From the NCBI GenBank assembly GCA_964252035.1, contig OZ176206.1: a DNA stretch of 64,000 nucleotides. One strand, 5' to 3'. The DNA comes from Podarcis erhardii. Lineage: Eukaryota. This document shows, piece after piece, positions 8,750-63,646 of the stretch. Position numbers and translations under genes: made by a program. The notes under the pieces were generated by a model, which saw nothing but the letters and a program-made list of their open reading frames with translations, was not told where the DNA came from and made no database searches. Every line of letters begins with the position of its first letter. Positions within the stretch are counted from its first letter, which is position 1.

Positions 8750-21591
<12,842 letters not shown>

Positions 21592-23447
21592 GGAAAGCAG
21601 GGCCAGCCTGAAAAGAAACGCATGGCACATTGTCCATTGGTCAAGCACCAAGGCCTGTTTCTTTGGCTGGGGGCAGCATTGCCGAGAGACCAGCTGAGCC
21701 TCACTTTGCCATGGAATCATGGGACACTGTCAGGCTCCCCTTCCACCAAAGGACCAGCAACAATGTTCAAGGACCACTGTCTGCAGCAAGCAACCTTTCT
21801 TCAGTTCTCCCCCTCCAACGAAGGACATGAACTGGGATGGTTGCTTGGAGCAGAGAAAAGCAGGTGCCACAAACAGCCTCTGTGCCTCCAGTAAACTCAT
21901 TGACCATCTGACGCACACAGACCCAGCAGTCTGGGAAGGTAAGAGCAGGAGAGGAGTATCCTTTCCAGGAGACTGCTCTGCTCAAGGGACCAAGGGCTGC
22001 CTTATTATGCTCAGTGCCTTCACTCCAGCTTCCCCCCTGCTTTCCCTTCCCTTCCCTTCCCTTCCCCTCCCCTGCCAGCCTGCCTTGCAAATGGGCAAGA
22101 GTGAACAGCAGAAGAATTTCTGTGAACCTTGAGAACCCCGTGGACTTATCTAAGGGTTGAAGTGAATAGGAACATGGTGCTAGTTTAAATGGTGCTACTT
22201 GAATCCTTAGCTTCTAGCTCTGTTGACATAAGGGGCCCCAGAGGATCCAGGGGGCAGGAGCTCCAAGCAAATCCAATAGGGCCACTCCAGACCATGGCTG
22301 TCCTGTGTGCAACATCAGCTGCTTTCCCATTGTCTGCGGAGCAACCTCCTTTACACAATGCCTGTTATTTCTCACCACCAAATGCCTTCCCTGCAGAGGA
22401 GGCTTTGTCTTGAGGGCAGCAGTGCAGGAACTCCCTCCTGCTTGTTTAGGCAGTTTATACTTCAGTCTCACCTGAGTCCCTGCAAAGGAGCAGCTCAGGG
22501 CCCCTTTGGGCCCTTTACTTCCTGCTGATTTTGCCTCAGAAATGTCACCTATGGTGGGCAACCAGTGGGCTTCCATGCAAGACATCTTAGTGGCTTTGGG
22601 GCTCTATCTCCTAGATCAATGTTGGAGCAGTCAGGGCAGGAGGATATGCAGCCCAACTCACCCCCCCCCCCCCACTTCTAGCACTCCTTTCTTGGCACCT
22701 TGTGCTCAGTCACCAAAAGGCTTAGAATCCGTACCTGTGAGGGTTTTGATTTGGGTGTGTTGTGCCAACTCTCTTGTAGCTGCTGCCTTTGGAACCAAAT
22801 CAACCTGGCATTTGCCCATGTATTGCCCACTGGGCAGAAGTCGTCCTGAACCCCCTGCCCCATGTTGGCAAAGCCTCCCATGTAAAACCTGTGCGTCGGC
22901 TCGGCCTTGCCCCTCCCCCCCGCCTCCACTCCACCCCCACTGCTAGCTGCTTCTGCTGTTTACTCACTTGAATGCTGGCCGTTCCAAAGCATTTGACCGA
23001 CCAGCTTCTGAAAAAGTGACTCAGCAGAAACAACGCTGACTAGCTCAGCAAAACTGCTGGCTTTACTGAAAGTCATATTTGCTACATTCAAAGACCAAAA
23101 TAAGTTTGGGCACCACCTTCTTCCAGGAGTCCAGCATAGGAGCCGTCTTCTGCATGATGAGTTGCTTTTTTCTTTCCCTGTCCTTGAGAACCTTTGCAGG
23201 GAGTCACATTTTCACATGAAAGGTGCCCCATATCTACCATATAAGTATAGGTCAGACGTATGTGTCCTTCTTGCCCAGTAATGCTGCATACCCCAGCCTT
23301 TCCCACCAGTGGTCCTCCAGATGTTTCAGAACAGGGGCTGATGGGGGCTGTAGTAATTGTAATGGTCTTGTCTGTTTTTATAGTCTTTTCTGTTGTTAAA
23401 ACCTGACCTGGGACCTTAGGGTTGAACAGCGGGCCACAAATCTTATA

Positions 23448-23453
23448 AATAAA
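23448..23453 (+). terminator. Candidate AFG3L1 polyadenylation signal
   Basis: AATAAA about 1.9 kb after the AFG3L1 stop. Confidence 0.4.
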
Positions 23454-47500: not shown

Positions 47501-50500
47501 AGGGAGCTGCTTCCTTATGGCACAGTCTCACTCTTCTGGAAGGTGTATGTGTGTGACTTTGTAGCCATGGTGTGTAAGGCCCATCTCATGAGTCCGCCCT
47601 ATGTTGTGTGTAAATGAGGCTAAGTAGCAGCTTGATAGAGAGCACTGATTTGTGTAGGGCCTGTCTTGCATACCAGCTCCTGTCTGTTTTGCAGTCATTC
47701 CGAGGGAGGGGCCTGAGGCTTCCTTGAAATGCCACATGCATTATAAGGTGGAACATGACAGCAGTTCTAAGCTCCTCATCAAATTAAATGTGTCAAAATA
47801 GCTAGGCACGGGAGTGCCATTTGCTAGGCCTTCTATGAATTCCATCTCTGCTGGGAGCTTTCTAGAAAGCCAGGCTCCATGGGCCCATCCTTTGCTCAGA
47901 GTTGTTTATATATAGTCTGAGCACTTCCAGTACCTTTGGGTGACAACATTTTCCAGTCAGCCGAGAGTCTTGCTTCGCCCTCTTGTTGGAGCTGGAGAAC
48001 ACTTTGCCCCATCTCCTCTTCCACACAGCATAGAGAAACAGCCCACAGATAGAGGCATGCATAGCCTTGTCACTTTTTTGCCTAGTAGAGCACTCAGTCT
48101 GCCCTGGGTGCTGCTTCCCCAGAGATCGAGGCCAAGTATGAGAAGAAGATGCGGGTTCTACGCGACGAGCTAGACTTGCGCAGGAAGACTGAAATCCATG
48201 AGATTGAGGAGAGAAAGAATGGACAGATCAACACACTGATGAAGAATCACGAGAAGGCTTTCAGCGACATCAAGAACTACTACAACGATGTCACTCTTAA
48301 TAACCTGGCACTTATCAACACCCTCAAGGTAAAAGACATGCACCACACGACACCATCCCCAAATCAGCCTGTTGCCAGGTAGTGGAAGGTCAAAGTGGAT
48401 GGTGTTCATTGGGCTTTCTGTGTTTTGTTTTTTGTTCTGCTTTGGCTGATTTCTGTACTGCCATTGCTTTAGAGCCACTACATGTTGCATTTGTTTGCTC
48501 TGCCATTGTGGATACCTTGAGTCCTGGAGCTCCTCTCTTGTGCATCTCACTATGGACCAACCCTTGTTGTAGTTGAAGGTCATGTGTTTCTCATTTGGGG
48601 AAACGAACCTTTCTGGTTTGGGGAGAAAGTCTGTTTCTATATTTTATATGTCAACTGCGACCTTGTTTGTTTGGAAATTTGTTCCATTCACTTCAGTGGG
48701 CCAGTCAAATGAGTCAGGGTGCAGGCTTGGTTATCCTCAGGTGAGTCAGAGCTGTTGTTTCTCTTTGCCTTGGTGGTGGTGGGTCCCATGGGAGGTTTGA
48801 GGAAGCATGTTCCAGGCAGGTGGTCAGGACTGGTGGGATGGGGCTTGCTGCCTGTTTTTGAGGACCTGAGGCACACACAGCCTCCTTTCTCTGTGTGTGT
48901 CTTGGAGTACAGGAGCAGATGGAGGAGATGAAGAAGAAGGAGGACCATCTGGAGAAGGAGATGGCTGAAGTGCTGCTGCAGAACAAAAAGCTGGTGGAGC
49001 CACTGCAACGAGCCCGTGAAGAGGTGGCGGAGCTGCAGAAGAAACTGGCGCACTATGAAAAGGACAAGGCCATGTTGCATGTGAGTCCCAGGGCTCTGCA
49101 TTCACCTTTGCTTCCTGTGTGTCCTGGCCAATGAACTCTGGGTTACTTAGTAGGACTGACTCTCTGCTAGTTTGGTGTGAACAGCATTGGGCTATTTCTG
49201 CACCAGCCCACTTTCATGCCACAGATTTTTATTTCCACTTTTGGTAGCAGTTTGCATTGTCTCTATTCTCATGTGCCCTTTATTTCCAGAGTTTGGAAAT
49301 TTGTACTGTGTGAAACAGGCACCACCCTTTCTGTGATGTCCTTCAGTGCTAACAGTGGTCATTTAGAGTCTAGACAAATGTTACTGCTCCTTCCATTCTA
49401 GTTGTTGTCCAGCACTTTGCTTTTTATTTTTATCAGTGTTTCAAGATGAGAGTTTCGTGATTTTACATGCAGCCACATACTCACGACCAGAGATCTCTTT
49501 TTAAGTTTTGTTCCCTTTTGATGCTGCACACTCCACCAAAATTGTTGCTGTGTCTGAATGCACAACAGTTTTGCCATAATCAAAAACAGACTCATTCAAA
49601 ACACAACTGCAGAGCAATTGAGTTACTATGTGAAGAGGAAGGCAGGGGGCCATAAGGATCATGAAACATGCTGGAAGTTGGGGGCAAGAGACCCCTGAGC
49701 TGATGTTTCCAGGATGAGGGACTTGAATGGTTCCCAGTCCCTGTGGAGCAGATAGAGGAACATAGTACTTTCCCACTCCTTTGCACTGTCTAGTTTGGAG
49801 GTCAAAACTCATCAGTCCCTTCTGTGCCCTAGGAACTGTGTGCGGCTGCTTTAACCTCCTTCTCTTCCCTCTCCAGCACACACATGCCCGTTTGAAAGTC
49901 ACCGAGAAGGAATTAAAGGATCTCCAGTGGGAACATGAAGTGCTGCAGCAAAGATTCATCAGGGTAGGGATCAAGAATCACTGTTGTGCTGTGGCTGAAC
50001 TCAGAGTTGAAAGAGGGTTGGATTTGATGGGTGGGCTGTGGGACAGGATGAAAAGTATGGGCCCATTTTCTGCAGATATCCAGTAGAGAGGTCTATATAC
50101 CCACCCACCATCCATTGGGCCTTGAGAATTCTGTGGTCCTGGTTGTTTCTTGATGAGACCTTTAGAGCAGATGGACAAGTCTGAGCCAAAACTGCCTGCA
50201 ATAGGCATTCCCTATCATCTCCAAATTAGCTGTGTAAATTTTTGCAGTTCTTTTGGATTGCTTGAGCAGCTGGACTTTGTGTTTGTCTGAACAGTGGCAT
50301 TTCTACTGCTGGGCTGGTCTAGTCATCAGTATGACTTAAAGAAGTGGGGACTGTGATACTGGGGAGGGGCAGCTCCCATCAGAGGGGGGGATGGAAGGGA
50401 GGGGCTCTCTTCAGTATAATTCATAAAGACTTGGGGACAGGTTTGCGTGCCATTCAGCATAGATCTGAGACCTCATTAGCTGCCTTTGAAAACTGGCTGC

Positions 50501-53500
50501 AGTGGTCCTGTCTTAATGAGGGGGTCTCTTACTAACAAGAATTGGGTCAGGCTGCCTCCCATCCCTCCTCCCCCACAGATCCTTGCAAAGTGCATTGGGA
50601 GAGAAAGGAGGCCTTTCTGTCCCCAAAGGCATCATTCTCTTGCTCCCCTGAAGCTGCTTAAAGCCCATGGCCTAGTCTGCCATGCCTTGCTGGGTGGTCT
50701 GTTTCTGTTCCTGAAATGGGGGAAAGAGGTTGCTGCAGATTCCTCAGTTCTCTGGCTTCTGAGGAGGAGACAAGCAAGCGTGCTGGGGGCTTCCCTGGAG
50801 CTGCCCTCTTTGACTGCTACAAGGCCGGGGGTTGAAAACAGGGGCTTGACTCTTCCTGATAAAGGTCAGCATATGGGAGCACAGCAAGGCAGTGGGTGGG
50901 CATTTGCATGGCATGTGCGCACACACACATGCACACACACACACACACACACATATAGCACAATGCAAGAGGATGGTTTTAACTGATAAAAACCTAATCA
51001 CCCCCAGCCCTGTCTTCCAGCTCCCACTGCCTTCCCTAATAGCCTGAGGGGCTGCCTCAGAGCTCTGCATTGCTCCTCCCTCTGTGACTCACTAAAGTCC
51101 CAACTTTTGGAATCATTGCAACATATTTTCATCTGTGTTGGTTTGTGACAGAGGGGTTGGGCAGCTGTTGTCATTGGGTAGCTGGCTTTTTATTTTTGGA
51201 AGAAGACTTTTACGCATGAATGTTAGGACTATAGACAGTTGCCTAAATACACACCCAGACCCTTGGTCCATGCAGCTCCGTCATGTCTATGCACTGACTG
51301 GCAGTGGCTCTCAAGGCTTCACCTTTCCCAGCCCTCCCTGGAGATGTGCGGGATGCAACTTTGGACATTCTGTATGCCAAGCATGTGCTCCACCACTGAT
51401 CTCCAGCCCTTTCCCATGTGCTCACAGTGGACAAGCAAAACACACAAAAACCCAAAGCGCTTTATTAACAGACAGGATACCTGGTTTAGGGGCTTCATGG
51501 GGCACCAGTCTGTGCCAAGGCTCAGAGCAGTGCTCTCTTTTACTCTGGGGTTGATGGTTGTTTGCACAGGTGCAGGACGAGCGAGATGACCTGTACCAGA
51601 AATTTACCAAAGCCATTAACGAGGTGCAGCAGAAAACTGGCTTTAAGAACTTGTTGCTGGAGCGGAAGCTTCTTGGCCTCTCCAACATCCTGGAGAAGAA
51701 GGAGGTGCAGCTCAACGAGGTCCTGGCTGCCACCAACCTTGATCCCGGTGCTCTCAGTGTGGTCACCCGCAAGCTGGAGGTACTGTGCTTCTAATCACCA
51801 TGGGGATTATAGAGAAAGTTTATAGATATTTTTCTAATACCCTTCAGTTAAACAAACAGCTCCCAGGCCAGATTAGAACAATTGGTCAGATTCCTTCTTG
51901 CTGCTGTTTCAGATGGGGTTTGTCCCTGGGTTTCATATTACCAAGATGGATTAGGCAAGATCTAGGTAAAACCTTGCAATGCACAGGAAAAAGGTGCACT
52001 GGCTAAAAGGGAGCTGCCAGGGGCTCAAGGTGTGGGCAAGTGCAGGGAGCCATCCTATAATAGACTCTGCCCAACCTGACAAGGGGAAGTTAGTTTTTCT
52101 CTGAGCACTCCCCCTCATTCAGGGGCAATTAATAAATGTAGCCTGCGCAGTATTTCAGAGGAGCTGCGCTTAGTTGTGCACAAGAGGCCCACAAGCATGA
52201 AAAGACTTTGCCTCAGCCCTCCAAACAATCAGAGCATGTACAGTAGTACCTCAGGTTACAAACGCTTCGGGATACAAACGCTTTGGGTTACAAACTCCGC
52301 TAACCTGGAAGTAGTACCTCGGGTTGAGAACTTTGCCCCAGGATGAGAATGGAAATCGCACGCCAGTGGCACAGCGGCAGCAGGAGGCCACATTAGTGAA
52401 AGCGCGCCTCGGGTTAAGAATCGTTTTGGGTTAAGAACGGACCTCTGGAACGAATTAAGTTCATAACCCAAGGTACCACTGTACCAACATTTCCATTTGC
52501 CAAGCAGGTTCTGAATGCACACGCACACAACTGGCCTCCAGTTGCCTCGGGTTGGCTAGAAGTTGCTGGGAGGTGTTTGTTTCCAGCAGCAGCTATAGAA
52601 GACAGCCACATGGGCAGGACTGTGGGCAAAAGGGACCCTCGCAGCAGTGACTGAACCAGTGGTGGGGTGAACTGCTCCACTGGGGAATGCTTTCCCTTCC
52701 TATCTGACCTGAGCCTCTTTGGTGCTTTCTTGGGACATGGAATGCACAAGCAGTCAGCAAGTGTCTGTTGTGCTTCTGGCTGTGAGAATACACTTGGCAT
52801 GAGGGTGCTGTGCCTGGGGAAATCTGCAGGAGCCAGATTGAAAGGGGAAGTTCCAGTGGTCAGAGACTTCAGTTTCTTTTCCCTCTGGCTGGTGGAGTTG
52901 GAAGAGATTCTACATGCAAATCTGCTGAACCTATGTGCCATTTATTCTGGTCCCAGAATCCGTTCAGTACACAGAGCACACATGCCCCTTTGCAGCATGA
53001 GAACTGTGAGAACTGAAGCGGCAATGTGCCCTCGTTGCCAGGGCGGTGTTTCCTGCTCTGCTGCTCAGTCTCCAGTGGAGATGGAAAGGGAGAGAGAGAA
53101 TGAGCTCCTGGCTGCCTTCTCGGTTCCTTGCCTCCCTCCTTCTCTCCCTGCGGCCACTTGGGACTGTCAGAATCTTTTAGCCACACAAGCATGGCTTGGG
53201 GACCTCTTGCTGCACAGCTTTCTCTCAACTCGTTCCACTCCATGGGGTTTCCCTGGTTGCTGATTTCCTAGCTGCCCGCTTTCTTTGCTAAGGTTGGGTT
53301 CTCTCTGACAGCGCCCTGGTACACAGCAAGGCGATCTGCACTTTCAAAGCATTCCCCTGGCACGTCATGTTGTTTCTGGGGAGCAGGGGCTGCCCATCAC
53401 ACTGCCAGGGCCCCTCCCCTCCGTGTTTCCAGCCCCAAGAGCCAAGGGAGGTTCTCCACCATAGGGACCTCTGTGGCCTCCTCACTCTTCAGGCTTCCTG

Positions 53501-55104
53501 TCCTGCCCAGTCTCTGAAATGCCTGATGGGATGGAAACAGAGTTATCTCCCGTGACTTGGCCTGCCTGGGAAGGGGGCTTAGTTAGCGGCTTCCACATTC
53601 CAAGCACGGCTGGCGCCAGTAACTGGAGATTCTTCCCAGAGGCAGCTGCTCCTTCCAGCAGGCCTCCCACATTCCTACCTTCAGCTGCTGCTTGCGCAGG
53701 AGGCACATCCACAGGGGATTCCCTGGGTATTGTAGCACCAGATCCTGTGCCAAATAGGGCAAAAAATGGCTTGGTGGCAGAAATGCCAGCCCACAGCTCT
53801 CATCTCCCATTACTGGCGGGCAACGCAGATGAGCCTTAATTTGAGTCACAAAGAGGAAATTGTGCAGGGAGGCAAGAGGCGCATTAGCTCCTGTTTGTGG
53901 ATGGAGTGCTCCACTGTGATTGCTATGCCAAGTGTGGAATGCAGTACTGTATACAAAATTCAGCACCCGTGAGAATCTCGGGTTTTACCTGATTTTGTAA
54001 AAGCAGGTTTCTAAACCTCATGGCCGTAGAGAGGCTTGGAAATACGTTGGCACTGCCTAATGAAATCACAGAAGCCAACCACAGACAGATTAGGACTTTC
54101 ATCATGCAGAATTTGTAGAAAGGAAAAGAGTCAAGCACAAGACTGTGCTGCAGAAGGGCACCTAACTTTGCATAGGCCTGTCGTGGCCCATTAAGAAATG
54201 GCCAGAAGCTCTGGCTGGGCCTTGACTAGTCCCCTTGTGGGCCAGTTCACTTGCCTGATGTGTTAACACCCAAACAACCTTCCTTCACAGGATGTGCTGG
54301 ATTCGAAAAACAATGCCATCAAGGATCTGCAGTATGAGCTAGCCAGAGTGTGCAAGGTAAGAGCTCCAGCTGAGGAGAACCCTGTAATTGTACTTGAATG
54401 TCTGTTGGAGCAAAATGTAGAGAGCAGGTCTCTTTAGACACAACCCAGGAAGGAAATATATTTTCCCTAGCGGTTGGCTTTTACTTAAGCCTTGTTTGAA
54501 AGCCATTTATGCCAGCAGGAATTCACTATCCTGTGGCAGTGAGTTCCATAGGTTAATGCCAAGAAGTGTGAATAAGTACTTCCCCTGTCTTTTCTAATGC
54601 CCACTGCCTACCCATCTCAGTGAACGGCTGATGGGTTTGACAAATGTTGTACTAGCCATCGCTCCATCTGACCTACCAAGTTGCATTGTATTCACCTTCA
54701 GCCCCATTTTTCTAAGTTAACAAGTTTGTTCTAAGCATTTGTTCCTTGAGATGGTCTAGCCTGCAACCATTTTAGTTGGCCTTTTCCTGCTCTCTTGCAT
54801 CCTTTTGGAGAAATATGGATGCAGCCGCCACTGCCATGGGTCCCTTGGGCTGGCTATTACCAGAGCATAGACAAGAGAAGTTGCCTTAGATGGCTGTGTT
54901 ATGGTATGTGATGTTTGATCCCTCTCCTCAACCTGCATTTGCCTCCCATTGCAGGCCCACAATGACTTGTTGCGGACGTACGAGGCCAAGCTCACAGCCT
55001 TTGGGATCCCTTTGGACAATTTGGGCTTCAAGCCCCTGGAGACCTCCGTGATCGGCCACACGCTGGGCCAGGGCCCTGCTGGGTTTGTCTCAACCCCCAC
55101 GTAG
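44422..55104 (+). CDS. GAS8: Growth arrest-specific 8 / dynein regulatory complex subunit 4; 11 exons, 482 aa
   Basis: Exons 44422-44424 (ATG only), 44948-45046, 46069-46266, 46885-47091, 47307-47361, 48123-48328, 48913-49080, 49877-49963, 51570-51779, 54291-54356, 54955-55104 total 1449 nt. MAPKKKG...[26 protein letters not shown]...[14 protein letters not shown]...[24 protein letters not shown]. Confidence 0.96.
52241..52481. mobile_element. Tigger-like Tc1/mariner MITE
   Basis: TIRs cagtagtacct / aggtaccactg flanked by TA on both sides (52239-52240, 52482-52483). Confidence 0.85.
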
Positions 55105-55257
55105 CACAGCCTGACATCATACTTTGGAATGCCTTCAGCCTAAGCCTTGTGTGCAAGCAAGCCACTGTCCCGCTCCTGCTGTGGCCGTAGAGGGGAGGGA
55201 GGGAGGGAGAGAGCAGCCCCCTGGAATGAGATTGCGTCTGCTCCAGCCCTCATTTGT

Positions 55258-55263
55258 ATTAAA
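55258..55263 (+). terminator. Candidate GAS8 polyadenylation signal ATTAAA
   Basis: About 155 nt after the GAS8 stop. Confidence 0.5.
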
Positions 55264-55710
55264 GAGGCCCTGTGGTGGGCTATTCAGTCTTCAGTCTCTG
55301 CAAAGCCTCCCTTTTTCTTTCCCACCCACGTCAAGGCAGAGCTTGGGGACTTGAAAAGCATTCTCCTCTTGATTATTGAGCCCCTGGACTACTTAATCTC
55401 ACCTTATCTAGACCCTCCAAAGTCCTCCACACCTATGTTGTGTCCACTCAAGCACCATCCAATGTGAGAACCTCTGAAGAGCCTGGCTTCTGGATCCAGG
55501 CTAAAGGACTACCTAGTCCAGCATCCTGTTTCCCACAGTGGCCAAGCAGATGCCTCTGGGAAGCCCACAATCAGGACGTGAGTGCAGCAGCCCTCTCCCC
55601 ACTCATGTTCCCCAGCAACTGAGGGAGCCCTACCTAATCAGTAGAGCACACATGTTTCAAGGACCCAGACCCAATTCATGGCATCAATTTAAAAGAAGAG
55701 GCTTACAAGT

Positions 55711-55869
55711 GAGTTAGTTCTAGGTATGAGCTTTCGTGTGCATGCAGTGTGCATGCACACGAAAGCTCATACCTAGAACTAACTCAGTTGGTCTTTAAGG
55801 TGCTACTGGAAGGAATTTTTTTATTTTGTTTTGACCATGGCAGACCAACACGGCTACCTATCTGTAACC
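55711..55869. mobile_element. Penelope-like fragment with head-to-head inversion
   Basis: Perfect 36-bp inverted repeat 55711-55746 / 55750-55785; 12-bp direct repeat (TSD) aggcttacaagt at 55699-55710 and 55870-55881; same family as 8093-8180. Confidence 0.85.
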
Positions 55870-56045
55870 AGGCTTACAAGTATCAGTCTTTAGATTACTC
55901 TCACATTTACTACGAGGCAGTTGCGGCTTGGGCCAGAAGTGGCCGTGGATGTAACCACAGCTCTCCAACCGCTGGACTGTGCCAGCTCTCTCAGAACAGG
56001 CACCCCGGTTTGCTGAAGCAGCCCCTCCTGCTGGCCGGTCTCCCA

Positions 56046-56967
56046 CTAGCTTCCCCTGTAGGTGGTGTAGGAATAGGGGCTGAGCAGCAAGGGGATGTGC
56101 ACTTTTTCTTCCTCTGTGATGGTGAAGACGATCTAAAGAGAGAGACAAGCAAGAGGATGTGTAAAGACAAGGGGGGGGGGGAATAGCAGGAGGTTGGTAG
56201 TGCTCTTTGGTCTGAGATCCTTTCTTCGCTGCACTGGGCTTAGCCCAGGAAAAGACATTTGTCAGGGGCACAAATGCCTGGTCTGGAGCACCCCTAGTGC
56301 CCAGTCCTGGCACACTTCTAGCTTTGTGCTCTTTCAGGGATGTCCCATGCACAACATCTAGCTCTCCTACCAACCACCTGGGCCTCTTCCTGCAGGTTTC
56401 TGAGGGACTTCACGGTGTGCAGCCTTCATAATGTGAAGTTTATGCTGATTTCTCCCATTTTCCAACGTTGTGCTTCTCCTGCTAGGAATTATATCCCTCA
56501 AAGGGCAGTGAGTGGTGGTCCCTGCCATCATCAGTCCTCCCTATGTAGGAAGGAGCCTCCCCCCCCTCCAGGTGTGAGTTTCATCTGGGAACCAAACTTA
56601 CTTCCACATAAGGGTAAAAGCTGCTGTATCCTTGTTGCTCCCAGTACTCCCTCGTCTCAAAGCGCAGCTTATAGGTGCCAGGTTTCAGCTCCCTAGGCAT
56701 CGGGCTGTTTCTGTCCAAGCGCCCATCAGGGTTTGTCTTGCTGGAAAAGAATAAATGAGGCTGAAACGGCAACAGCCCCAGCCCTACCAAGGGAGGGAGA
56801 TGGTCCTGCTTCATCCCCTCCTACCTCTTCATGAGCTCTGCCCACGGACGTTGGGGATCCTCCAGCTTAGAGAAGTGCATGGCCAGGCCTTGGGCAGGGA
56901 GGCCGGTGAGCACGTTCAGTGCGTGGACAGTCAGGAAAGCGTGGTGGACCTCATCAGAACTAGCCAC
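56046..56967 (-). CDS. URAH: 5-hydroxyisourate hydrolase (transthyretin-like), 3 core exons; N-terminus unresolved
   Basis: Exons 56967-56825, 56740-56602, 56132-56046. LTVHALNVLTGLPAQG...TNPDGR...PGTYKLRFET..YW...SFYPYVEIVFTI...VHIPLLLSPYSYTTYRGS*. Catalytic His, Arg, His and the terminal YRGS are all present. The start is either the in-frame ATG at 57045 or an upstream spliced exon. Confidence 0.92.
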
Positions 56968-57247
56968 CTGGGATTCAGAATGGAGAGCCGGGTGGAGCAA
57001 AAGCCTCTGTACGAGTTCCTCCCCCTCCCAGTTTCCTAGGCCCATCGATTCCCAAAGGAAGATGTCCTTGCCACCCTCAGCAGCAGGCCCTTATTTTCCA
57101 AGCTCTTTCTTGCTGCCCTCAGCAGTTTTTCCTGTTTTAAAATGTTTGCTTTTTCTGTGTGCATGGGGGCTTTCTGTGAGGTGTTGTGGTTGTGGGGAGA
57201 GAGGGAGCAGAGCTGTGCTGTGCCTGTCAACAGCACCCCACCCACTG

Positions 57248-57303
57248 CTCACCCATCCACCAGCTGTGTATTCAAACACAAACTCTGCTGGTGGATGGGT
57301 GAG
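57248..57303. repeat. Perfect 17-bp inverted repeat with inner 5-bp stem (hairpin)
   Basis: ctcacccatccaccagc / gctggtggatgggtgag; inner tgtgt/acaca. Confidence 0.9.
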
Positions 57304-58438
57304 GAGTTTTGCTGGGGGTGGGGGGGTGGGTTAAGGACAAGATGCCCTCGGCAGACCCTGCTTGCCTTCTGCTGTCCACACTGCCCATTCATTTGCCCAA
57401 ATTGTAGCCCTGCAGCTTGACATAGTGCCTGCCACTGTTTGTACAGAGAAGGCAGGTAAGCAAGTAAATGAAGGTGCAGAGGAGGTTCAGGGGCAGTGAA
57501 GGTCAGCAGTGGTCCCCACTGGCTGTGTCAGGATGGGCCTGGGCAGGTGCCTTACAACACCAGCCCCTTGACAGAAGCCCTGGCTGACAGAAGTGCATTC
57601 ATCCACTCTTAAGCATGGCGGAGCAGTACTCCTGGGTTTCAAACAGAGGTCCTTCCCAGCCCTATCTGGAGATGTTGGTGATGAACCTAAGAACACTGAG
57701 TTATGACCCCTCTCCACCCAGAAGGTGGGCCTGAACAATGGCAGCTCTGCTCCCTGTCCCATGTATGATTTCATTGCCTCCTTAAACATTTGATCCCTGG
57801 CCACAGAGTTCCTTTACTTTCTGGCACATGCCATGAAACTCCCCAAGACAATCAAGAATGTGGCATTCAAGCTTCTTGTTTTTCGTGAGCTGCAAGAAAT
57901 ATACATTCCCATCCCCTTGCCAAGTTTCCCAATGAAACACCAAGGCAGGAAGGCTGTCCCTTCTCTTGGGCTGAGCCCACCCACCATCCTAGGATCTCTC
58001 ACCACCTGGGGTCTCCCTCCTCCATCCCTCTGTGGTAGTTGGTTTCTCTCATCCATTCTGGGGCATTTCTGATGCAGCCCCTCCTAACTCCACTTCCTAC
58101 TTGCCTTCCACTGGCAGGCTGCCTGCCTGTCATGACTCAGCAGAAAGTCTTAACCCTTTTGTTGCCACGAGGGCAGGCTCAATCGGGTGCCCCCTGAAAA
58201 CATGAGAAAGGGGCCCAATTCATTTCATGGCAAGGGGGGAGGGTTCCATCTCCATCTCTACCCAGCCTAATCTGTAAAATATACATTTGAAGTTCTTGGG
58301 ACTTCTCACTGGAGTAAAATGCAGCAAGCATTTTGTGGGAGAACCAGCAATACTGTCATGCCCCAGCAAGAGCAAAAAGGAAGATACAGGAGCAGTTGCA
58401 TGGTTACCCGAGAGTATTTGTGAGTTCCTAATCCTTAC

Positions 58439-60715
58439 TTGGATCACTGCTGTTGCTGTAGTGCTAAGACCTTCTCCTAAGCAGTCTGTAGCCTGCAGGA
58501 TCAGAGTGTATTGGGGGGTTACCTGTAAACAAATATATCCATTAGCATTTGGGCAGAGGGGATCGAAGCACCAGAAGGCAAAGCAGTGTTGTGTAAGATC
58601 CTGAGAGCCCCACTGGCCATGTAACTCGAGGAAACTTCAAACTCACTAGGGTACTTCCAGATACAGCCAACTGAAATGGGACAAAGCTGTTATGCTAGAC
58701 CAGGCAGAGGCAAACTCAGCCCTCCAGATTTTTTGGGACTACAGTTCCCATCATCCCTGACCACTGGTCCTGCTAGCTAGGGATCATGCGAGTTGTAGAC
58801 CAAAAACATCTGGAGGGCCAAGTTTGCCTATGCCTATGCTAGACCACCCTTGTTATTAGGAATATGTGAAAAGAAAATTCTTCATTATTGCAAACCATAC
58901 AGTTAAAGCACATGACTTCCCCCAGAGGATCTGGGCAAATGTAATTTGCCCCTCACAGAGCTACAATTCCCAGCACCCTTGACAAACTGCAGTTCCCAGG
59001 ATTCTTTGGAGGAAGCCATGTGCTGTAAATGTGTACAGCTTATGTCCACTTCATCTTCTGTTTAGGGCAGCCCTCCAGATATTGGAAGGTGGCAGTCATG
59101 CTGTTCATCTGCTCCAGACTCAAAGCCTTCCCTCTTCTCTTTCAGAAATCCCTTGCAAGCCCCTCCCCATCCTGCTTGGTCCCCCTCCAGCTAGCCTCTA
59201 ATCCACCAGTGCCTTATGGCCCAGTGTTTCCACTAGGAGTGAAGCACATCAGCAGAGCCAAGGGTTGCCTTAAAGGGGAAATTTGGCATCATTAATCATG
59301 CCCTCTCCCTACACAGCCAGGACCCAGCCACTTACCGTTCTGTCAAGTCCTGGTTTGTTCAAGCTGATGACCCCTGTTCTATTATCGATGGCAAACATTT
59401 GGCTCTGTGGCTTTGTGGGGGTCTGGATATCGAGGGAGTAGGTGATTACCCCATTGTAGGAATTCACAGCGTCATCTATGTCAGTGGCTGATACTTGTGT
59501 CACAAAGGTACCTGGGTGTGTGTGCCACAAAAGTCCAAAGTTCAGCTTCTGAAGTGCATCACACACATACCCGCAACATAGCCGATCATCCCAGCTTGGA
59601 GGTCAAATTGACTCTGCCCCAGACAGCTCCAAAATTACCTCTTAGCCTCTGAGTGAATGCAAACTGTGCAGCAGCTGGGTGCGATCTGCACTGCTTTTAT
59701 GCCAGTCCGCAAGTTATGGTGGGCTCAGTAGTGACTGCCCAGGCCATACAGGTAGAAAAAAGCATAGTTAGGGGCCTGGGTTTTGCACACATTATACCCC
59801 CTCCCTTTGTGGGTGCTCCTTCCATAAAAAATGGGCAAAGGATATAGGCATTCAGAGGCAAATAGTAGGGGTTTCCATACATTCAGTTTATGCATGTGCA
59901 ACCAGACAGACAGACACGTACCTGGCAGGGCTCCTTCTGCTATGGAGCCATGGAAGATGCTCTGGGTAAAACGGGGCTTGTTGTCATTCTGATCAAGCAC
60001 CTCGATGACTATCTCTGTGGGGTTCCTCACAGGCTGCCCAGTTGCACTTACAGCTTGAAGAAAGAGCTGCAGAGCAAGCAGGGTAGCAATTGAGACACTC
60101 CCCAAAGCTGCCTCTCACCCTCCCAGACACCTTCCCACAAGAGTGTAGAGCTGCCCTTCTCTTCACACCAAGAGCACCCAGGAATTTACATTAGGGGCTA
60201 AAAAGTATTTAGATACTGTATGCTGAGAATTCAAAAATGAAACTAAGCTGAACTTTCTCCTCCTTCCCATAAATAATGGTTGCTAATACTATTGCTTCCC
60301 GGGGATTCCCCAAGAACTGACATAAAGCAGCAGCAAACATGTGATTTCCACTCTTTCCCTGTCCCATAACACGTAGCAGCCTTCCCCAACCTGGTGCTCT
60401 CCAGCAGTTTTGAACTACGAGTACCATCAGCTCCAGCCAGCACAGCTATATGATGCTTGGGCTGATGGCAGCAGTAGTCCAAAGGATCTGGAAGGCACCA
60501 GGTTGGCAAAGGAAGTTTTAAGAGGTGCTGGGAGGTTCCAGGGTGGCAGAAGCTAGCACAAAGGGACTTACAATGTATTTGTCTTTGGTCTCTCTGTCCA
60601 ATGGCATGGTCACCATCAGCCAGCCTGTCTCTCTTTCAAGGATGAAGATGCCTTGAGGAGGTCTGTCTGCACCAGTCCCAGTGACACTGTAGAAAGTCAT
60701 GCCATCTTTACCTAC
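58439..60715 (-). CDS. Truncated type I classical cadherin (CDH1/CDH3-like), exons homologous to CDH1 exons 5-8 (EC1-EC2); open frame but coding status uncertain
   Basis: Exons 60715-60572 (144 nt; [30 protein letters not shown]), 60066-59922 (145 nt; [16 protein letters not shown]), 59511-59336 (176 nt; [18 protein letters not shown]), 58522-58439 ([24 protein letters not shown]). The 145/176-nt sizes and phases match CDH1 exons 6/7 as recalled. Confidence 0.85.
58701..58836. mobile_element. Palindromic hAT MITE (gactacaactcccatca family)
   Basis: TIRs caggcagaggcaaact / agtttgcctatgccta; exact 8-bp TSD tgctagac (58693-58700, 58837-58844). Related copies at about 395-540, 1095-1195, 14980-15070, 30965-31010, 35425-35530, 45180-45270, 45630-45770, 58960-59020 and 60385-60510. 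Confidence 0.85.
59532..59544 (+). promoter_or_regulatory. HNF4 DR1-type motif AGTCCAAAGTTCA
   Basis: Exact match to a canonical HNF4 site; function untested. Confidence 0.4.
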
Positions 60716-61323
60716 CTGGTTGCAAATGAACATGTCAAAACTGAGAAGGTCTGTTTTCTTGTTGCATCCCTCTATGCCTCCCTCAGAGGTAGAACACAGA
60801 GAGGGATTCTGAGCAGGTTCATAGGAGGAAAAGAAGTCCTCCGAGCATAGTGGTTCTGAGCTGTTCAAGGCACATGAAGAGAAAGAGGCAGTTGCCCTCT
60901 CTGTCTATACCTGCAGCAGACGCTTGGGGTAGGGACCGATGCCATTCTCCATGACCAATATTGGAGGCAGAAGTTGCAAATCCCTTTTCTGCCTCTTCAG
61001 ATCAAGTCTGGATTCTGGAAAGGTCAGCACTTCTGCCCAAGCAAATAGGAAGGAGACCTGCAAGGGGGAAAGAGAGTTGCATTATTATTATTTTTAAAAA
61101 AACCTCATTCAGAGCCCAATCCCATGGCATCTTCTATGTGAAGACAAGTTTGGCACTCCTTAAGATTTGTAGGGATCTCGGGACAGGACAGTGCTGAACC
61201 TCAGGATTCAGTCCTGGAACATGTGAAGGAAGACACGTCCTGGAATCTGGACACACCTCTATGTCAAGAGTATCTTCCTTCTATCTTAAATGTCAGTATT
61301 GGGTTTGCATTATTGTTATTTAC

Positions 61324-61408
61324 CTGAAGTCCTTTCACTTCATCTACCTGCCACAGGTAGCAACCAGTCTGTTTTGCAGCCTCTATTGAGCAGTAGTCAA
61401 GGGTAGAG
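61324..61408 (-). pseudogene. Degenerate cadherin exon-4 remnant (furin site / DW.. mature N-terminus)
   Basis: agg ctg caa aac aga (RLQNR, like RRQKR) is out of frame with GAC TGG TTG CTA CCT (DWLLP, like DWVIPP); stop codons in both ancestral frames; intact CAG|gtaaat donor. Confidence 0.5.
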
Positions 61409-63646
61409 CTGATGAGAGTGGAGATGGGCCAAGAGGCCTTGCCATGGCTCCCACACCCATGGCCACCATCTTGTTGACCCCTTGGGCTAGCCTTATTTGT
61501 TTTATCTGATCCCTCTGCAAGGCCAGATGCTTTGCAGTCCATGGAAGATTCATGGTCCCTGTTGACAGTTTAAAGGTTGGTGCTCCCTGGTGGTTGTTTT
61601 TAAAGGAAATGCATGTTTGCTGATTCAACATTAGTTTGGAACATTGGCAACTGCTCTTATCTTCTCGAAACCTATTTGCTTTGAACAACTATGCTGCCGG
61701 TAGAGTACAGTGTAGAGAGACACAAGCCCAATATTATGAAACCTTCCTCAGCCTAGTAACATCCCTATGCTCATTCGATGGTCACATCTCCCCCACACTC
61801 TGTTCATGCTCCTCTTCATCTTTATCCCCACACCCCAGCTCTTCCACAAGGCCATGTTCAACACAGCTGGGGGACAGCACCCGTACTTTGCATGCAGGAA
61901 TTCCCAGATTCAAACCCAGCCGCTGCCATCCTTAAGGATTTCTGCACAGCAAAATCACTGCCTGGAGTCTTGGGGAACTGCTACTAGTCAACACTAGTTG
62001 GACAAAGAGCCCGGCCTGCTGTAATAAGGTTGCTTCATGTGTTGGTACCTCTTCTGCACCTACAAAACCCTTAACCCAGCCCCTCCACCATTAATGCCAA
62101 GAAGATCCTTCTACAACACCAAAGATACTAGCCCCGCTTCGCTTGCTCTTTGGAGGACAATCCTACCTGAGAGTGAAGAACCAGGAAGAGCAGGAGGCTG
62201 ACCCTAAAGAAGCACATTGTCCGGCTTCAGCTCTTGCTCCTTGCCTTCTGCAAAACTCTGGCAAAGGGATGGCAACCCAGGTGACTAAGCTAGAGCAAAG
62301 TCTGCCTGGCAAGTCCTTTTGGAGGAAGGGTTAAGGGCAAATTGGCAGGCCTGGGGTATTTTGACACACCACATGGAAGCAGGCCACAGTTCATTCAGCA
62401 TGTGGGACTAAGTGAAGGGCATGTGCTTGTGCCCTAGGAACATCTCTTGCAGGTGGCACTGCCCTCCATTGTGCAAGTCTCATTTATTCTGGCAGGGTAA
62501 GCATTTATTCTGCTCTCATTTGGGAGCAGGTATTCTCAGGACTCGACCCTCTGAAGCTCTTTCGAATATCAGGGCTGTTTTATGGCCTTTCTCCCTTTGT
62601 TTTGATTCAGAGCAGAAATTTTCAATAAAACATGGAGCGGAGGAAGGTGTTGTTATGAAAACAGAGGAAGCCACTTTCCTTGTGCAGAAAGGGAGGAGGG
62701 TCTGTCCACTCTCCCTTTCACAGTAGCAGGAGAGTGCCATGCCTAGTCCTGACCTCGTGGCAGACATAGCTTCCTCAGAAGGCAAACCAGGTGCCCCACA
62801 GGTTGAGGGCTTTGAGGAGCAGGCAGAGGCTCCTGGAACAAGTGATGAGAAGGGCCCCTGGGGACATACCTGCTTAAGAACCCTTGGAGCTGTCAGAGGA
62901 GGTGGAAGTGCCCCCTGCCCCGCCCCAGCCCTCAAGAGCACTGGTGCCAAAAGCTTTTAGTCCAGATTGAAGAGCAACGATACAGCTTGCATTTATAGAA
63001 CCAGAGCCCCCAGTCTACTTGTGAATGTGAAAGCCTTGATTCTCCTTCACTGCCAGCATTTGTGGTTAGAGAGTGGTTTAGGAGGCTAGAGTATATAAGA
63101 CCCCTCTCCTGCCCTTTGAGCCTTTCAGTTGCCAGAAATAACACAGATCTCTGGCTCCTTGTTCCTGGCTTTGGCGCCCCCACCCCCCTGAACTCCCTGT
63201 GTGATCGACTGTGGACCATTTCCTGACTTTGCTTCTGCATCGCATGTTGGACCTAGACAGATTCTGTCTGCTGGACCTATGGAACTCTGCCCTCTTGGCT
63301 AAGTGTCTTGGTAAAGGCTTTTTACCCTCCTGTGACCGAGGCCCCAGCCCTGGAGGAAAGTGCTGCAAGAGTAAGTAGAAGGAGGCAGACACTCACACAT
63401 GGGCACCACTGTATTATATCAAAAGACTAACCAGGATCTGGTCCTCATTTGTCTTGACATTCTCTTTAAATCCCCATAGCAGAGATTTCTCCATGAAGTT
63501 GTTAACAGCAAGCTGATGTACAGATAGCAGCAGCAGAGGTTTCCACATCGGTGCACAAAGAACGGCTGCCCACCATTCAACTTCTGAACGAGGTTTGTTG
63601 CTTTATGTTATAAACTGGTTTCAAGCTAACACGGTTGGCAGAAGCG

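What the first reader, a model, noticed from the sequence alone, without database searches (positions are those of the whole stretch)
56046..61542. Candidate cadherin EC1-EC2::HIU-hydrolase (URAH) chimeric gene, spliceable into one 378-aa ORF
Seen in sequence: cadherin homology in exon 8 ends at ...GTG ATC CAA|gtaagg (58439), a good phase-0 donor. The URAH core exon begins after a pyrimidine tract at aatcccag|GTG GCT (56967), also phase 0. The chain 61542-61324, 60715-60572, 60066-59922, 59511-59336, 58522-58439, 56967-56825, 56740-56602, 56132-56046 totals 1137 nt with no stop, all introns GT-AG. The junction reads TATAVIQ|VASS, so URAH's first codon restores the Val that ends the EC2 G strand. 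The URAH core exon has no ATG before its catalytic His, so it needs upstream coding sequence, and I found no convincing separate URAH first exon between the two genes. Established: HIU hydrolases form transthyretin-like homotetramers, and EC1-EC2 is the adhesive unit of type I cadherins. Inference: a tetravalent cadherin-domain enzyme would be an undescribed fusion, plausible in a uricotelic lineage where urate-pathway genes may have been repurposed. Caveat: phase agreement at a junction has a 1-in-3 chance, and URAH could instead start at ATG 57045.
Basis: partly seen in the sequence, partly recalled or inferred. Interest (0 to 1): 0.85.

Follow-up and report, generated by a model that had tools for sequence, protein, structure and literature searches.

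The report
Real cadherin–HIU hydrolase fusion gene
This lizard's urate-pathway enzyme gene (5-hydroxyisourate hydrolase, URAH) is transcribed as one message behind a signal peptide and two cadherin domains. The same fusion is already predicted as 'cadherin-1-like' in many reptiles, birds, amphibians, some mammals and coelacanth, yet I found no paper that describes it.

Summary
RNA contigs of four runs from close relatives carry it at 76-100% of URAH exon depth.

The 5' end was misread. Transcripts include a 147-nt exon (61057-60911: furin site RQKR and the start of EC1). They begin at a signal-peptide exon (ATG 62217-62167), not at ATG 61542. The supported ORF has 9 exons, 1116 nt and 371 aa: signal peptide, short propeptide, EC1-EC2, then an HIUase with all catalytic residues.

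It is 95-97% identical to the RefSeq 371-aa 'cadherin-1-like' proteins of three Podarcis species, so the gene model is already public. Orthologous fusions beside GAS8 occur in turtle, bird and fox. Similar architectures occur in snakes, geckos, amphibians and coelacanth, so it is ancient, not a uricotelic novelty.

In Podarcis the HIUase part is strongly constrained (dN/dS 0.04-0.14). The cadherin part is weakly constrained (0.35-0.85), has lost Trp2, and is largely deleted in Lacerta agilis. ATG 57045 is not conserved. A conserved internal first exon (58056-58003) offers a stand-alone isoform.

I found no paper describing the fusion.

The parts
62167..62217 (-). Coding part of exon 1: ATG plus 17 codons of a hydrophobic signal peptide (cadherin exon-1 homologue). 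Donor GT at 62166-62165. The 5' UTR extends upstream; the transcription start is unknown.
   Evidence: The loose end of an X1 contig at 61060 (depth 541) matches 62194-62170 exactly. Sequence read. 96-97% conserved in three Podarcis species and Lacerta. Same first exon in RefSeq Podarcis models. Hydropathy peak 3.3.
60911..61057 (-). Exon 2 (homologue of CDH1 exon 4): end of the signal/propeptide, furin site RQKR, first 23 residues of EC1 with Leu in place of Trp2.
   Evidence: Joint 60911->60715 in all four runs; joint to 61324 in X2 and X6. Translation. Alignment.
60572..60715 (-). Exon 3 (CDH1 exon 5 homologue, 12 nt shorter): EC1.
   Evidence: Joints 60715<-60911 and 60572->60066.
59922..60066 (-). 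Exon 4 (CDH1 exon 6 homologue, 145 nt): end of EC1, DQNDN calcium linker, start of EC2.
   Evidence: Joints.
59336..59511 (-). Exon 5 (CDH1 exon 7 homologue, 176 nt): EC2.
   Evidence: Joints 59922->59511 and 59336->58522.
58439..58522 (-). Exon 6 = first 84 nt of cadherin exon 8 (end of EC2). Its donor GT lies where intact cadherin exon 8 reads on with a Val codon.
   Evidence: Joint 58439->56967 in four runs at 76-100% of URAH depth. Same break point in snakes and, within 6 nt, in turtles.
56825..56967 (-). Exon 7: URAH core exon (143 nt, also 143 nt in turtle). The acceptor lies 14 codons before the catalytic His.
   Evidence: The acceptor TCCCAG|GTGGCT is identical in six lacertids. Pfam PF00576 on the 95-97% identical P0090.
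56602..56740 (-). Exon 8: HIUase, with the conserved DGR arginine.
   Evidence: Joints.
56046..56132 (-). Exon 9: end of HIUase (HIPLL histidine, C-terminal YRGS) and stop TAG. The 3' UTR continues to at least about 55900.
   Evidence: (contigs reach 55899-55972).
61324..61382 (-). Minor cassette exon: 59 nt here, 63 nt in relatives. Inclusion in this genome runs into a TAG.
   Evidence: Joint 61324->61057 in X2 (61) and X6 (7), and 'CTGG put in at 61345' in X2. P. muralis isoform X1. Sequence.
58003..58056 (-). Alternative internal first exon (begins MDERNQ; donors at 58006 or 58003) that would give a stand-alone HIUase of about 140 aa without a signal peptide.
   Evidence: The block 58120-57960 is 95-99% identical and gap-free in six lacertids, against an 87-92% background. 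Used in Lacerta agilis X1/X2. Homologous N-termini in Pogona and Anolis models. No splice from it appears among the joints shown.
57043..57045 (-). Not conserved.
   Evidence: Removed by a 30-nt deletion in P. raffonei and a 15-nt deletion in Zootoca. The intron-retaining contig has about 4% of the spliced depth in X1 and about 5% in X2.

Best explanation
This is the lacertid orthologue of the vertebrate URAH (5-hydroxyisourate hydrolase) gene. It lies tail-to-tail with GAS8, as the human pseudogene URAHP does (the human position is from memory).

Shown:
- Its main transcript starts at a cadherin-derived first exon (ATG 62217).
- It runs through four cadherin-derived exons and the first 84 nt of cadherin exon 8.
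- It then splices in phase 0 into URAH, 14 codons before the catalytic His. The result is one 371-aa ORF in 9 exons.
- The ORF is intact in four Podarcis-type genomes. Turtles have the same 9-exon plan.
- The HIUase part keeps its catalytic His, Arg, His and C-terminal YRGS, and it is under strong purifying selection.

Inferred:
- The N-terminal hydrophobic segment sends the protein into the secretory pathway.
- A furin-type protease cuts after RQKR.
- The HIUase domains assemble into the usual homotetramer, displaying four calcium-stiffened EC1-EC2 arms.
- In this lineage the arms have lost Trp2 and Lys14, so they probably no longer make classical cadherin dimers. Here the cadherin module may matter mainly as the supplier of promoter, signal peptide and spacer.
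- A conserved internal first exon (58056) probably supplies a minor non-secreted HIUase isoform.
For: - Splice joints 58439->56967, 59336->58522, 59922->59511, 60572->60066 and 60911->60715 occur in RNA contigs. The fusion joint has depth 872 vs 983, 296 vs 296, 187 vs 245 and 17 vs 20, compared with the internal URAH joints.
- Exon 1 is supported by a contig overhang that matches 62194-62170 exactly.
- The ORF is 1116 nt and all splice sites are GT-AG.
- It is 95-97% identical over its full length to RefSeq 371-aa proteins of P. muralis, P. raffonei and P. lilfordi. The same nine exons are intact in their genomes.
- Pfam finds Cadherin x2 plus Transthyretin/HIUase. The nearest solved structures are E-, P- and EP-cadherin EC1-2, at E about 1e-71 to 1e-77 by sequence and 51-58% identity in the E- and P-cadherin fold matches.
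- dN/dS is 0.04-0.14 for the HIUase part (p about 1e-5 against neutrality) and 0.35-0.85 for the cadherin part.
- The fusion mRNA has no in-frame ATG between the junction and the catalytic His, so a constrained HIUase made from the major mRNA must be made as the fusion.
- ATG 57045 is lost in two lacertids while the acceptor is invariant.
- Fusion genes lie next to GAS8 in fox, guineafowl and painted turtle. The turtle exon plan is 96/144/156/145/176/90/143/136/90 nt.
- Calcium-site motifs, the furin site and the HIUase residues are invariant or nearly so across 25 sauropsid fusion proteins.
- Over long spans EC1-2 identity (47-61%) is about as high as HIUase identity (50-75%).
Against: - The RNA is Logan contigs from related organisms (A and B), not reads from the window's own species. 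Contigs carry no strand, and the short side of the key joint is only 28-30 nt.
- Exon 1 to exon 2 rests on one 25-nt overhang plus RefSeq models.
- There is no protein-level evidence. The signal peptide is judged only from hydropathy and homology.
- Within Podarcis, neutrality of the cadherin part cannot be firmly rejected (p 0.04-0.23).
- Lacerta agilis has lost three of the cadherin exons and joins the signal exon directly to URAH.
- Zootoca's copy of exon 8' is frameshifted.
- Aberrant splice forms exist.
- The long-term similarity of the cadherin module may be kept partly by gene conversion from neighbouring CDH1 rather than by selection on the fusion.
Confidence: 0.75

Rival explanations
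1. The fusion message is real, but the cadherin exons are a decaying, functionally irrelevant leader. They would be a relic of a partial CDH1 duplicate that captured URAH. The biologically important HIUase would come from other isoforms: the internal 58056 first exon, or the signal exon spliced straight to URAH as in Lacerta and Pogona.
For: - Cadherin-part dN/dS is 0.35-0.85 and not clearly below 1.
- Trp2 and Lys14 are lost.
- The Podarcis branch in the EC1-2 tree is very long, 0.78.
- Lacerta agilis lacks exons 2-4 and has a disrupted exon 5.
- There is a conserved internal first exon.
- Non-productive splice variants occur.
Against: - The fusion joint carries 76-100% of URAH depth in four runs, and no joint from 58003/58006 is among those shown.
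- The ORF is intact in four genomes.
- The calcium-site, furin and EC motifs are kept here and across sauropsids.
- The same architecture has persisted in turtles, birds and snakes.
Confidence: 0.2
2. One reading: a 378-aa cytosolic chimera that starts at ATG 61542 and splices 61324 directly to 60715.
For: The chain is open and GT-AG flanked. A joint at 61324 exists.
Against: - 61324 joins 61057, not 60715. Exon 61057-60911 is included in all runs.
- Depth over 61316-61512 is 0-20, against 110-390 over the next exon in X1, X2 and X5.
- RefSeq relatives use only a 63-nt cassette there, and it is out of frame here.
- The major upstream partner is the 62217 exon.
Confidence: 0.02
3. Two separate genes: a truncated cadherin pseudogene, and a URAH gene that starts at ATG 57045. 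The junction contigs would then be read-through noise.
For: There is an in-frame ATG at 57045. An Ensembl 148-aa P. muralis model uses it. An intron-retaining contig exists.
Against: The ATG is deleted in P. raffonei and Zootoca, and no in-frame ATG remains between the upstream stop and the acceptor. The unspliced contig has about 4-5% of the spliced depth in X1 and X2. The junction is conserved from turtles to snakes.
Confidence: 0.03

Closest known systems
RefSeq 'cadherin-1-like' of Podarcis muralis (XP_028595730.2), P. raffonei (XP_053255873.1) and P. lilfordi (CAI5782301.1), each 371 aa
   Same: Same gene: same nine exons, same length, 95-97% identity, same GAS8 neighbour.
   Different: These are automatic models with a misleading name. 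UniProt auto-names some of them 'hydroxyisourate hydrolase'. No function or publication is attached. The window is another, closely related genome.
Predicted cadherin::HIUase proteins of other vertebrates: turtles about 373-391 aa, birds about 365-398, snakes about 372-375, geckos, Elgaria, carnivores 598-682, salamanders and frogs 467-613, and coelacanth '5-hydroxyisourate hydrolase B' 497 aa
   Same: Signal peptide, furin site, EC1-EC2, a break within or just after cadherin exon 8, then HIUase. The GAS8 neighbour was confirmed where checked.
   Different: - Most keep Trp2.
- Amphibians and coelacanth keep the full prodomain.
- Some models carry 3-5 EC domains.
- In several species the cadherin module is nearly identical to that lineage's CDH1, which points to renewal by conversion or re-duplication.
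Classical type I cadherins (CDH1/E-cadherin, CDH3, Xenopus EP/C-cadherin)
   Same: EC1-EC2 fold and exon structure (homologues of exons 4-8). The calcium-site motifs PEN-like E, LDRE, DQNDN and DxD are kept, as is the furin-processed N-terminus.
   Different: There is no EC3-5, no transmembrane segment and no catenin-binding tail. Trp2 is replaced by Leu, with a one-residue insertion. Lys14 is replaced by Ile. The prodomain is reduced to about 20 residues.
Stand-alone vertebrate HIUase (zebrafish and mouse Urah)
   Same: PF00576 domain, catalytic His, Arg and His, and the C-terminal YRGS tetrapeptide.
   Different: Metazoan transthyretin-like proteins are described as mostly PTS2/peroxisomal (Richardson 2015, PMC4324301). 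Here the major form has an N-terminal secretory signal and 250 extra residues.
Transthyretin
   Same: A member of the same fold family that is made with a signal peptide encoded by a separate first exon and is secreted (PMC4324301).
   Different: Transthyretin has lost the catalytic residues and YRGS and binds thyroid hormone. This protein keeps the enzyme signature.
Allantoin synthase (natural Urad-Urah fusion of plants, diatoms and bacteria)
   Same: A precedent for a large domain fused N-terminally to an HIUase domain that still forms the tetrameric core (review PMC13751858).
   Different: The fusion partner there is the next enzyme of the pathway. Here it is an extracellular adhesion module with no known link to urate chemistry.

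Membership tests
HIUase / transthyretin family (PF00576), HIUase branch | Significant match to the family profile over the whole domain | tested here: met
   PF00576 at 117.6 bits, profile positions 1-109 of 109, on P0090, which differs from the window's HIUase part at one residue. The window exons align 74-100% to the Zootoca URAH.
HIUase / transthyretin family (PF00576), HIUase branch | Catalytic His near the N-terminus, Arg of the DGR motif, His of the H-x-P-L-L motif | tested here: met
   TVHALN, DGRL and VHIPLL are present. His264 is invariant and His355 nearly invariant in 25 fusion proteins.
HIUase / transthyretin family (PF00576), HIUase branch | C-terminal Y-R-G-S tetrapeptide, which separates HIUase from transthyretin | tested here: met
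   The ORF ends ...TTYRGS followed by the stop.
HIUase / transthyretin family (PF00576), HIUase branch | Homotetramer and hydrolysis of 5-hydroxyisourate | not testable with these tools
   Only a monomer model was made. This needs expression, size measurement and an enzyme assay.
Classical (type I) cadherin | Tandem EC repeats with inter-domain calcium-binding motifs | tested here: met
   Two PF00028 hits. E of MEN, LDRE, DQNDN, D-I-D and N-S-Y-N-G are present. The fold matches E- and P-cadherin EC1-2 at TM 0.5-0.66 normalised to the target.
Classical (type I) cadherin | Trp2 for strand-swap dimerisation (and Lys14 for the X-dimer) | tested here: not met
   The mature N-terminus reads D-L-Q-L-L-P-P, against D-W-V-I-P-P in nearly all other fusion proteins and in CDH1. 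Position 14 is Ile.
Classical (type I) cadherin | Five EC domains, a transmembrane segment and a catenin-binding cytoplasmic domain | tested here: not met
   The ORF goes from EC2 straight into HIUase. No PF01049 hit. No further cadherin exons lie between 58439 and GAS8.
Secreted protein | Cleavable N-terminal signal peptide | tested here: inconclusive
   Arg5 is followed by a nine-residue hydrophobic core (mean hydropathy 3.3) and an A-W-A motif. The segment is homologous in position to the cadherin signal exon. No dedicated predictor or experiment was available.
Vertebrate cadherin::URAH fusion gene (database-only family) | One ORF joining the cadherin exon-8 region to the URAH core exon, at the URAH/GAS8 locus | tested here: met
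   Joint seen in RNA. The same junction occurs in snakes and turtles. GAS8 lies downstream in Podarcis, Zootoca, Lacerta, turtles, guineafowl and fox.

The most novel reading that the evidence does not exclude
The cadherin-URAH linkage may be older than the origin of transthyretin. If so, the 'signal-peptide exon | HIUase' transcript form seen here (and, stripped of EC domains, in Lacerta and Pogona) would be the route by which transthyretin acquired secretion. Transthyretin's signal-peptide exon and intron 1 would then descend from a cadherin first exon and from the cadherin->HIUase intron.

Supporting leads only:
- TTR's surrounding loci are desmosomal cadherin genes, DSG2, DSC2 and DSC3 (PMC7672937).
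- TTR's exon 1/exon 2 border lies in the N-terminal region, and its 3' splice site has crept 3'-wards from a longer ancestral N-terminus (PMC4324301). That places it close to the acceptor used here, 14 codons before the catalytic His.
- A messy sturgeon model also joins EC2 to a TTR-like domain.

Independently of that idea, the fusion protein itself may be a functional secreted, tetravalent, cadherin-armed HIUase in most tetrapods.
Probability: 0.2. Interest if true: 0.85.

Novelty: new member of a known kind. Interest (0 to 1): 0.6.

Why it matters
URAH is treated in the literature I could search as a small cytosolic or peroxisomal enzyme. Its retention and liver expression in birds and reptiles, which lack OHCU decarboxylase and liver uricase, are unexplained (Mori et al. 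2023, PMC10517255).

The major transcript form here encodes a precursor with a predicted signal peptide and a furin site, fused to cadherin domains. The same architecture is predicted from coelacanth to birds and carnivores. That would move the enzyme, or a new function of it, to the secretory pathway or the cell surface.

It would also give a natural example of a multivalent soluble cadherin fragment. And it would offer a concrete intermediate for how an HIUase could become a secreted protein such as transthyretin.

A 2026 review devoted to fusions of Urah does not mention it (PMC13751858). The gene models carry the name 'cadherin-1-like', which hides the enzyme and misleads anyone who relies on the annotation.

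For this particular window the finding is an ordinary orthologue of an already modelled gene.

Tried and rejected
rejected on RNA joints and depth and on RefSeq relatives.
- **URAH start at ATG 57045:** rejected as the conserved start, because it is deleted in two of six lacertids.
- **Prodomain exons between 62167 and 61057:** tblastn with a full Zootoca pro-EC1-3 protein found none.
- **Zootoca as a direct orthologue for dN/dS of the cadherin part:** rejected. The flanks are 87-92% identical but the cadherin exons only 73-77%. Its module groups with lacertid CDH1, so it is a replaced segment.
- **A single origin of the cadherin module, tested by tree:** not supported. The 'fusion' label needs at least 9 changes on the tree even counting only well-supported branches. 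Gene conversion or renewal makes the tree uninformative about the age of the fusion, so age rests on the shared break point, exon plan and synteny.
- **Literature:**
  - HIUase + cadherin: 0 papers.
  - URAH + cadherin: 4 papers. The two chicken papers I read only list the genes as neighbours; the other two were not read.
  - The search (min_terms 1) was swamped by 'coelacanth' hits. No listed paper held 'HIUase B' or 'hydroxyisourate hydrolase B'.
  - Forconi et al. 2014, the source of the coelacanth 'HIUase B' name, is not held. I cannot say whether it noted the cadherin part.
- **Other points:** the bacterial promoter/terminator scan was irrelevant to a vertebrate locus.

Full report
**What is in the sequence.** They total 1137 nt, contain no stop, and every boundary is AG|exon|GT. 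The cadherin match stops inside exon 8 immediately after ...AVIQ. The URAH core exon has no ATG ahead of its catalytic His. It reads ...AEVLTFPES..KRQKR|DLQLLPP..., which is the end of a cadherin propeptide, the furin site and the beginning of EC1.

**Transcript evidence.**
- *Source of the RNA.* Sixteen RNA runs hold 6-17% of the sampled words of 55800-61700. The DNA runs with 97% of the words belong to another organism code. The RNA therefore comes from close relatives, not from the window's own species.
- *The key joint.* I laid Logan contigs of four runs from three studies and two organism codes. All four carry the joint 58439->56967, at depths of 872, 296, 187 and 17. The internal URAH joints in the same runs have depths of 983, 296, 245 and 20.
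- *The other joints.* 59336->58522 and 60911->60715 are present in all four runs. 60572->60066 is present in three and 59922->59511 in two. So the 147-nt exon is part of the message.
- *The true first exon.* The major X1 contig (depth 541) continues upstream of 61057 with 25 letters that match 62194-62170 exactly. There the sequence reads ATG plus 17 codons of a hydrophobic leader followed by GT.
- *Unspliced form.* A contig that retains the 58439-56967 intron has about 4% of the spliced depth in X1 and about 5% in X2.
- *Limits.* Contigs are not reads, they carry no strand, and the short side of the key joint is 28-30 nt.

**The supported gene model.** The exons are 62217-62167, 61057-60911, 60715-60572, 60066-59922, 59511-59336, 58522-58439, 56967-56825, 56740-56602 and 56132-56046. 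Together they give 1116 nt and 371 aa, and all splice sites are GT-AG. In order, the protein has:
- a signal-peptide-like segment (hydropathy peak 3.3);
- about 20 residues of propeptide ending in RQKR;
- EC1-EC2;
- a linker of about 10 residues;
- a complete HIUase domain.

**It is already modelled.**
- *First search.* A phmmer search of 1.84 billion representative proteins with the URAH exon returned several long proteins with the match at their C-terminus. They have Cadherin plus Transthyretin/HIUase Pfam domains. They are RefSeq 'cadherin-1(-like)' or 'B-cadherin-like' entries of Zootoca, a snake, a gecko and turtles.
- *Wider searches.* Two word-index searches added birds, many snakes, Elgaria, Hemicordylus, Rhineura, geckos, carnivores (fox, meerkat, wolverine), salamanders, frogs and both coelacanths. 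One of the coelacanth entries carries the name '5-hydroxyisourate hydrolase B', which does not look like an automatic name.
- *Closest match.* A 371-aa 'cadherin-1-like' cluster from Podarcis lilfordi, P. raffonei and P. muralis is 95-97% identical to the window's ORF from first to last residue. Their genomes hold the same nine intact exons. The window is thus a Podarcis-type lacertid, and the gene model is public.

**Age and orthology.**
- The fusion gene lies tail-to-tail with a GAS8-type gene in Podarcis, Zootoca, Lacerta, two turtles, guineafowl (followed there by a dysbindin-domain gene) and fox. From memory, this is the position of human URAHP.
- The painted turtle gene has the same nine-exon plan, 96/144/156/145/176/90/143/136/90 nt, against 51(coding)/147/144/145/176/84/143/139/87 nt here.
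- The break falls at ...AVIQ|V in snakes and Podarcis, at ...AVIEVQ|V in turtles, and at the same spot of exon 8 in a newt and a frog. In coelacanth it falls a few residues later.
- The fusion is therefore not a squamate or uricotelic invention. It goes back at least to the amniote ancestor by synteny and exon plan. By architecture it probably goes back to early sarcopterygians.
- A sturgeon model hints at an even older origin, but that model is messy.

**The cadherin module is labile.**
- An ML tree of EC1-EC2 from 28 fusion proteins and 24 classical cadherins does not unite the fusion modules.
- The modules of Elgaria, Eublepharis and Paroedura sit with their own CDH1/B-cadherin, at 98%, 88% and 91% identity. 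Zootoca's module sits with lacertid CDH1.
- Neoavian, turtle, snake and Podarcis modules are old, diverged copies. The Podarcis stem (0.78) is the longest internal branch.
- CDH1 lies about 45 kb upstream, head-to-head, in P. lilfordi. A full-length cadherin lies 2.3 kb upstream in guineafowl. Chicken papers list URAH, DBNDD1 and CDH1 as neighbours.
- The simplest reading is repeated gene conversion or re-duplication from the neighbouring cadherin.
- Within Lacertidae three states coexist:
  - Podarcis has the diverged EC1-EC2 module.
  - Zootoca's flanks are 87-92% identical to the window. Its cadherin exons are only 73-77% identical, it carries a prodomain plus EC1-3 module, and its relic of the old exon 8' is frameshifted.
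  - Lacerta agilis has no match to exons 2-4 and a disrupted exon 5. Its RefSeq isoforms join the signal exon directly, or via exon 8', to URAH.

**Selection.**
- Among the window and three Podarcis genomes, Nei-Gojobori dN/dS is 0.04-0.14 for the HIUase part. For the largest comparison, 2 non-synonymous against 10 synonymous differences gives p about 1e-5 against neutrality.
- For residues 1-249 dN/dS is 0.35-0.85 (p 0.04-0.23). The two parts differ (Fisher p = 0.01 for the window versus P. raffonei).
- In two turtles both parts are only weakly constrained (0.61 and 0.46), and the turtle enzyme has changed the DGR arginine and the YRGS arginine.
- Over deep time the calcium-site motifs, the furin site and the EC framework are invariant or nearly so in 25 sauropsid fusion proteins. 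EC1-2 identity is as high as HIUase identity. Conversion from CDH1 could contribute to that.
- In the window the inter-domain calcium ligands are all present, but Trp2 is Leu (with a one-residue insertion) and Lys14 is Ile. The two canonical cadherin dimer interfaces are probably gone.

**Other ways to start URAH.**
- ATG 57045 is in frame, but a 30-nt deletion removes it in P. raffonei and a 15-nt deletion removes it in Zootoca. No in-frame ATG remains between the upstream stop and the acceptor. The acceptor is identical in all six lacertids.
- The residues just upstream of the acceptor (...ALHSESQ) match the N-terminus of the stand-alone Sceloporus model (MALSESQ). So the acceptor arose inside what used to be URAH's own first coding exon, and the old ATG is gone here.
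- A different start is conserved: ATG 58056 with donors at 58006/58003. It lies in a 160-nt block that is 95-99% identical and gap-free across six lacertids, is used in Lacerta models, and has homologous N-termini in Pogona and Anolis models.
- That start would give a protein of about 140 aa without a signal peptide. No joint from it is among the 15 joints shown (16 others were not displayed).

**How it most likely works.**
- *Shown:* a cadherin-derived promoter region and first exon drive the main URAH message. A donor inside cadherin exon 8 is spliced in phase 0 to an acceptor 14 codons ahead of the catalytic His. The major mRNA has no in-frame ATG between the junction and that His. The strongly constrained enzyme can therefore be made from it only as the fusion.
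- *Inferred:* ER entry through the leader, furin cleavage after RQKR, and tetramerisation through the HIUase domains. The natural Urad-Urah fusions are a precedent for an N-terminal partner on a tetrameric core (PMC13751858). The result would be a secreted enzyme with four calcium-rigid EC1-EC2 arms.
- In Trp2-bearing orthologues these arms could bind classical cadherins. In Podarcis they probably cannot, and the module may persist mainly as leader and spacer.
- The monomer model (mean pLDDT 70.7; EC2 and HIUase mostly 80-90, EC1 50-74) matches E- and P-cadherin EC1-2 structures.

**Literature.**
- No paper in the searchable library combines HIUase with cadherin. Of the four that combine URAH with cadherin, the two I read only list neighbouring genes.
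- Mori et al. [quoted passage not shown] They do not mention a fusion.
- Richardson 2015 describes transthyretin-like proteins of plants and most metazoans as peroxisomal (PTS2) and contrasts them with secreted transthyretin.
- Biscotti et al. [quoted passage not shown] The original coelacanth paper is not held.
- A 2026 review centred on Urah fusions covers only Urah-Urad.

**Verdict.** The 5' end, the protein length, the claimed absence of another first exon, and the lineage-specific rationale are wrong. For this window the feature is an orthologue of an already modelled gene, so it is a new member of a known, database-only kind. The family itself looks unstudied and is of real interest. The most novel reading left open links it to the origin of transthyretin's secretion signal. 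That reading is a lead, not a result.

Noticed in passing
window 58696-58950, 60400-60520 and 55800-55870: SINE-like repeats inside the introns and downstream of the gene. RNA word depth runs into the thousands to tens of thousands. The two intronic copies are inverted relative to each other: the joints at 58736/60414 are of the 'opposite strands' kind.
   Followed up: no
window 60716-60910 and 60572-60715: In run X5 (organism B) one contig retains the 195-nt intron after the furin-site exon. It then skips the next exon by using the GT that forms that exon's first two bases as a donor (joint 60066->60716, depth 84 against 127 for the normal joint). The retained intron opens with GTA TAG, so this form is non-productive.
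   Followed up: partly
window 61324-61382: The cassette exon is 59 nt here and 63 nt in relatives (CTGG inserted at 61345 in run X2; 21 extra residues in P. muralis isoform X1). It is either a species difference or an assembly slip. Inclusion here gives a premature TAG.
   Followed up: partly
window about 50012-55434 (+ strand): The 3' part of a GAS8-type gene, tail-to-tail with the fusion gene. It is 92% identical to the Zootoca stretch where a PF13851 gene is called.
   Followed up: partly
window about 618-1937 and about 12510-12839 (+ strand): ORFs with C1-domain/DEF8-like motifs and AAA-protease (AFG3L1/SPG7-like) motifs. They are consistent with the gene order of the human 16q24.3 end (DEF8, AFG3L1P, DBNDD1, GAS8, URAHP). 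The names come from motifs recalled from memory and were not searched.
   Followed up: no
L001 (Zootoca vivipara) 10001-24600: Zootoca carries a CDH1-like prodomain plus EC1-3 segment in place of the Podarcis EC1-EC2 exons. Downstream of it sits a frameshifted relic of the old exon 8'. This is a recent replacement of the cadherin module within one lizard family.
   Followed up: partly
P0133 (Acipenser sinensis model, 974 aa): A sturgeon gene model joins cadherin EC2 (...TATAIITVTD) to a transthyretin-like domain that lacks the catalytic His. The model is repetitive and flagged UNVERIFIED_CONTAM.
   Followed up: no
P0014, P0022, P0032 (turtle fusion proteins): Turtle HIUase domains have His or Asn in place of the DGR arginine and end in YKGS instead of YRGS. 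Their dN/dS is 0.46, so the enzyme may be relaxed or changed in turtles.
   Followed up: partly
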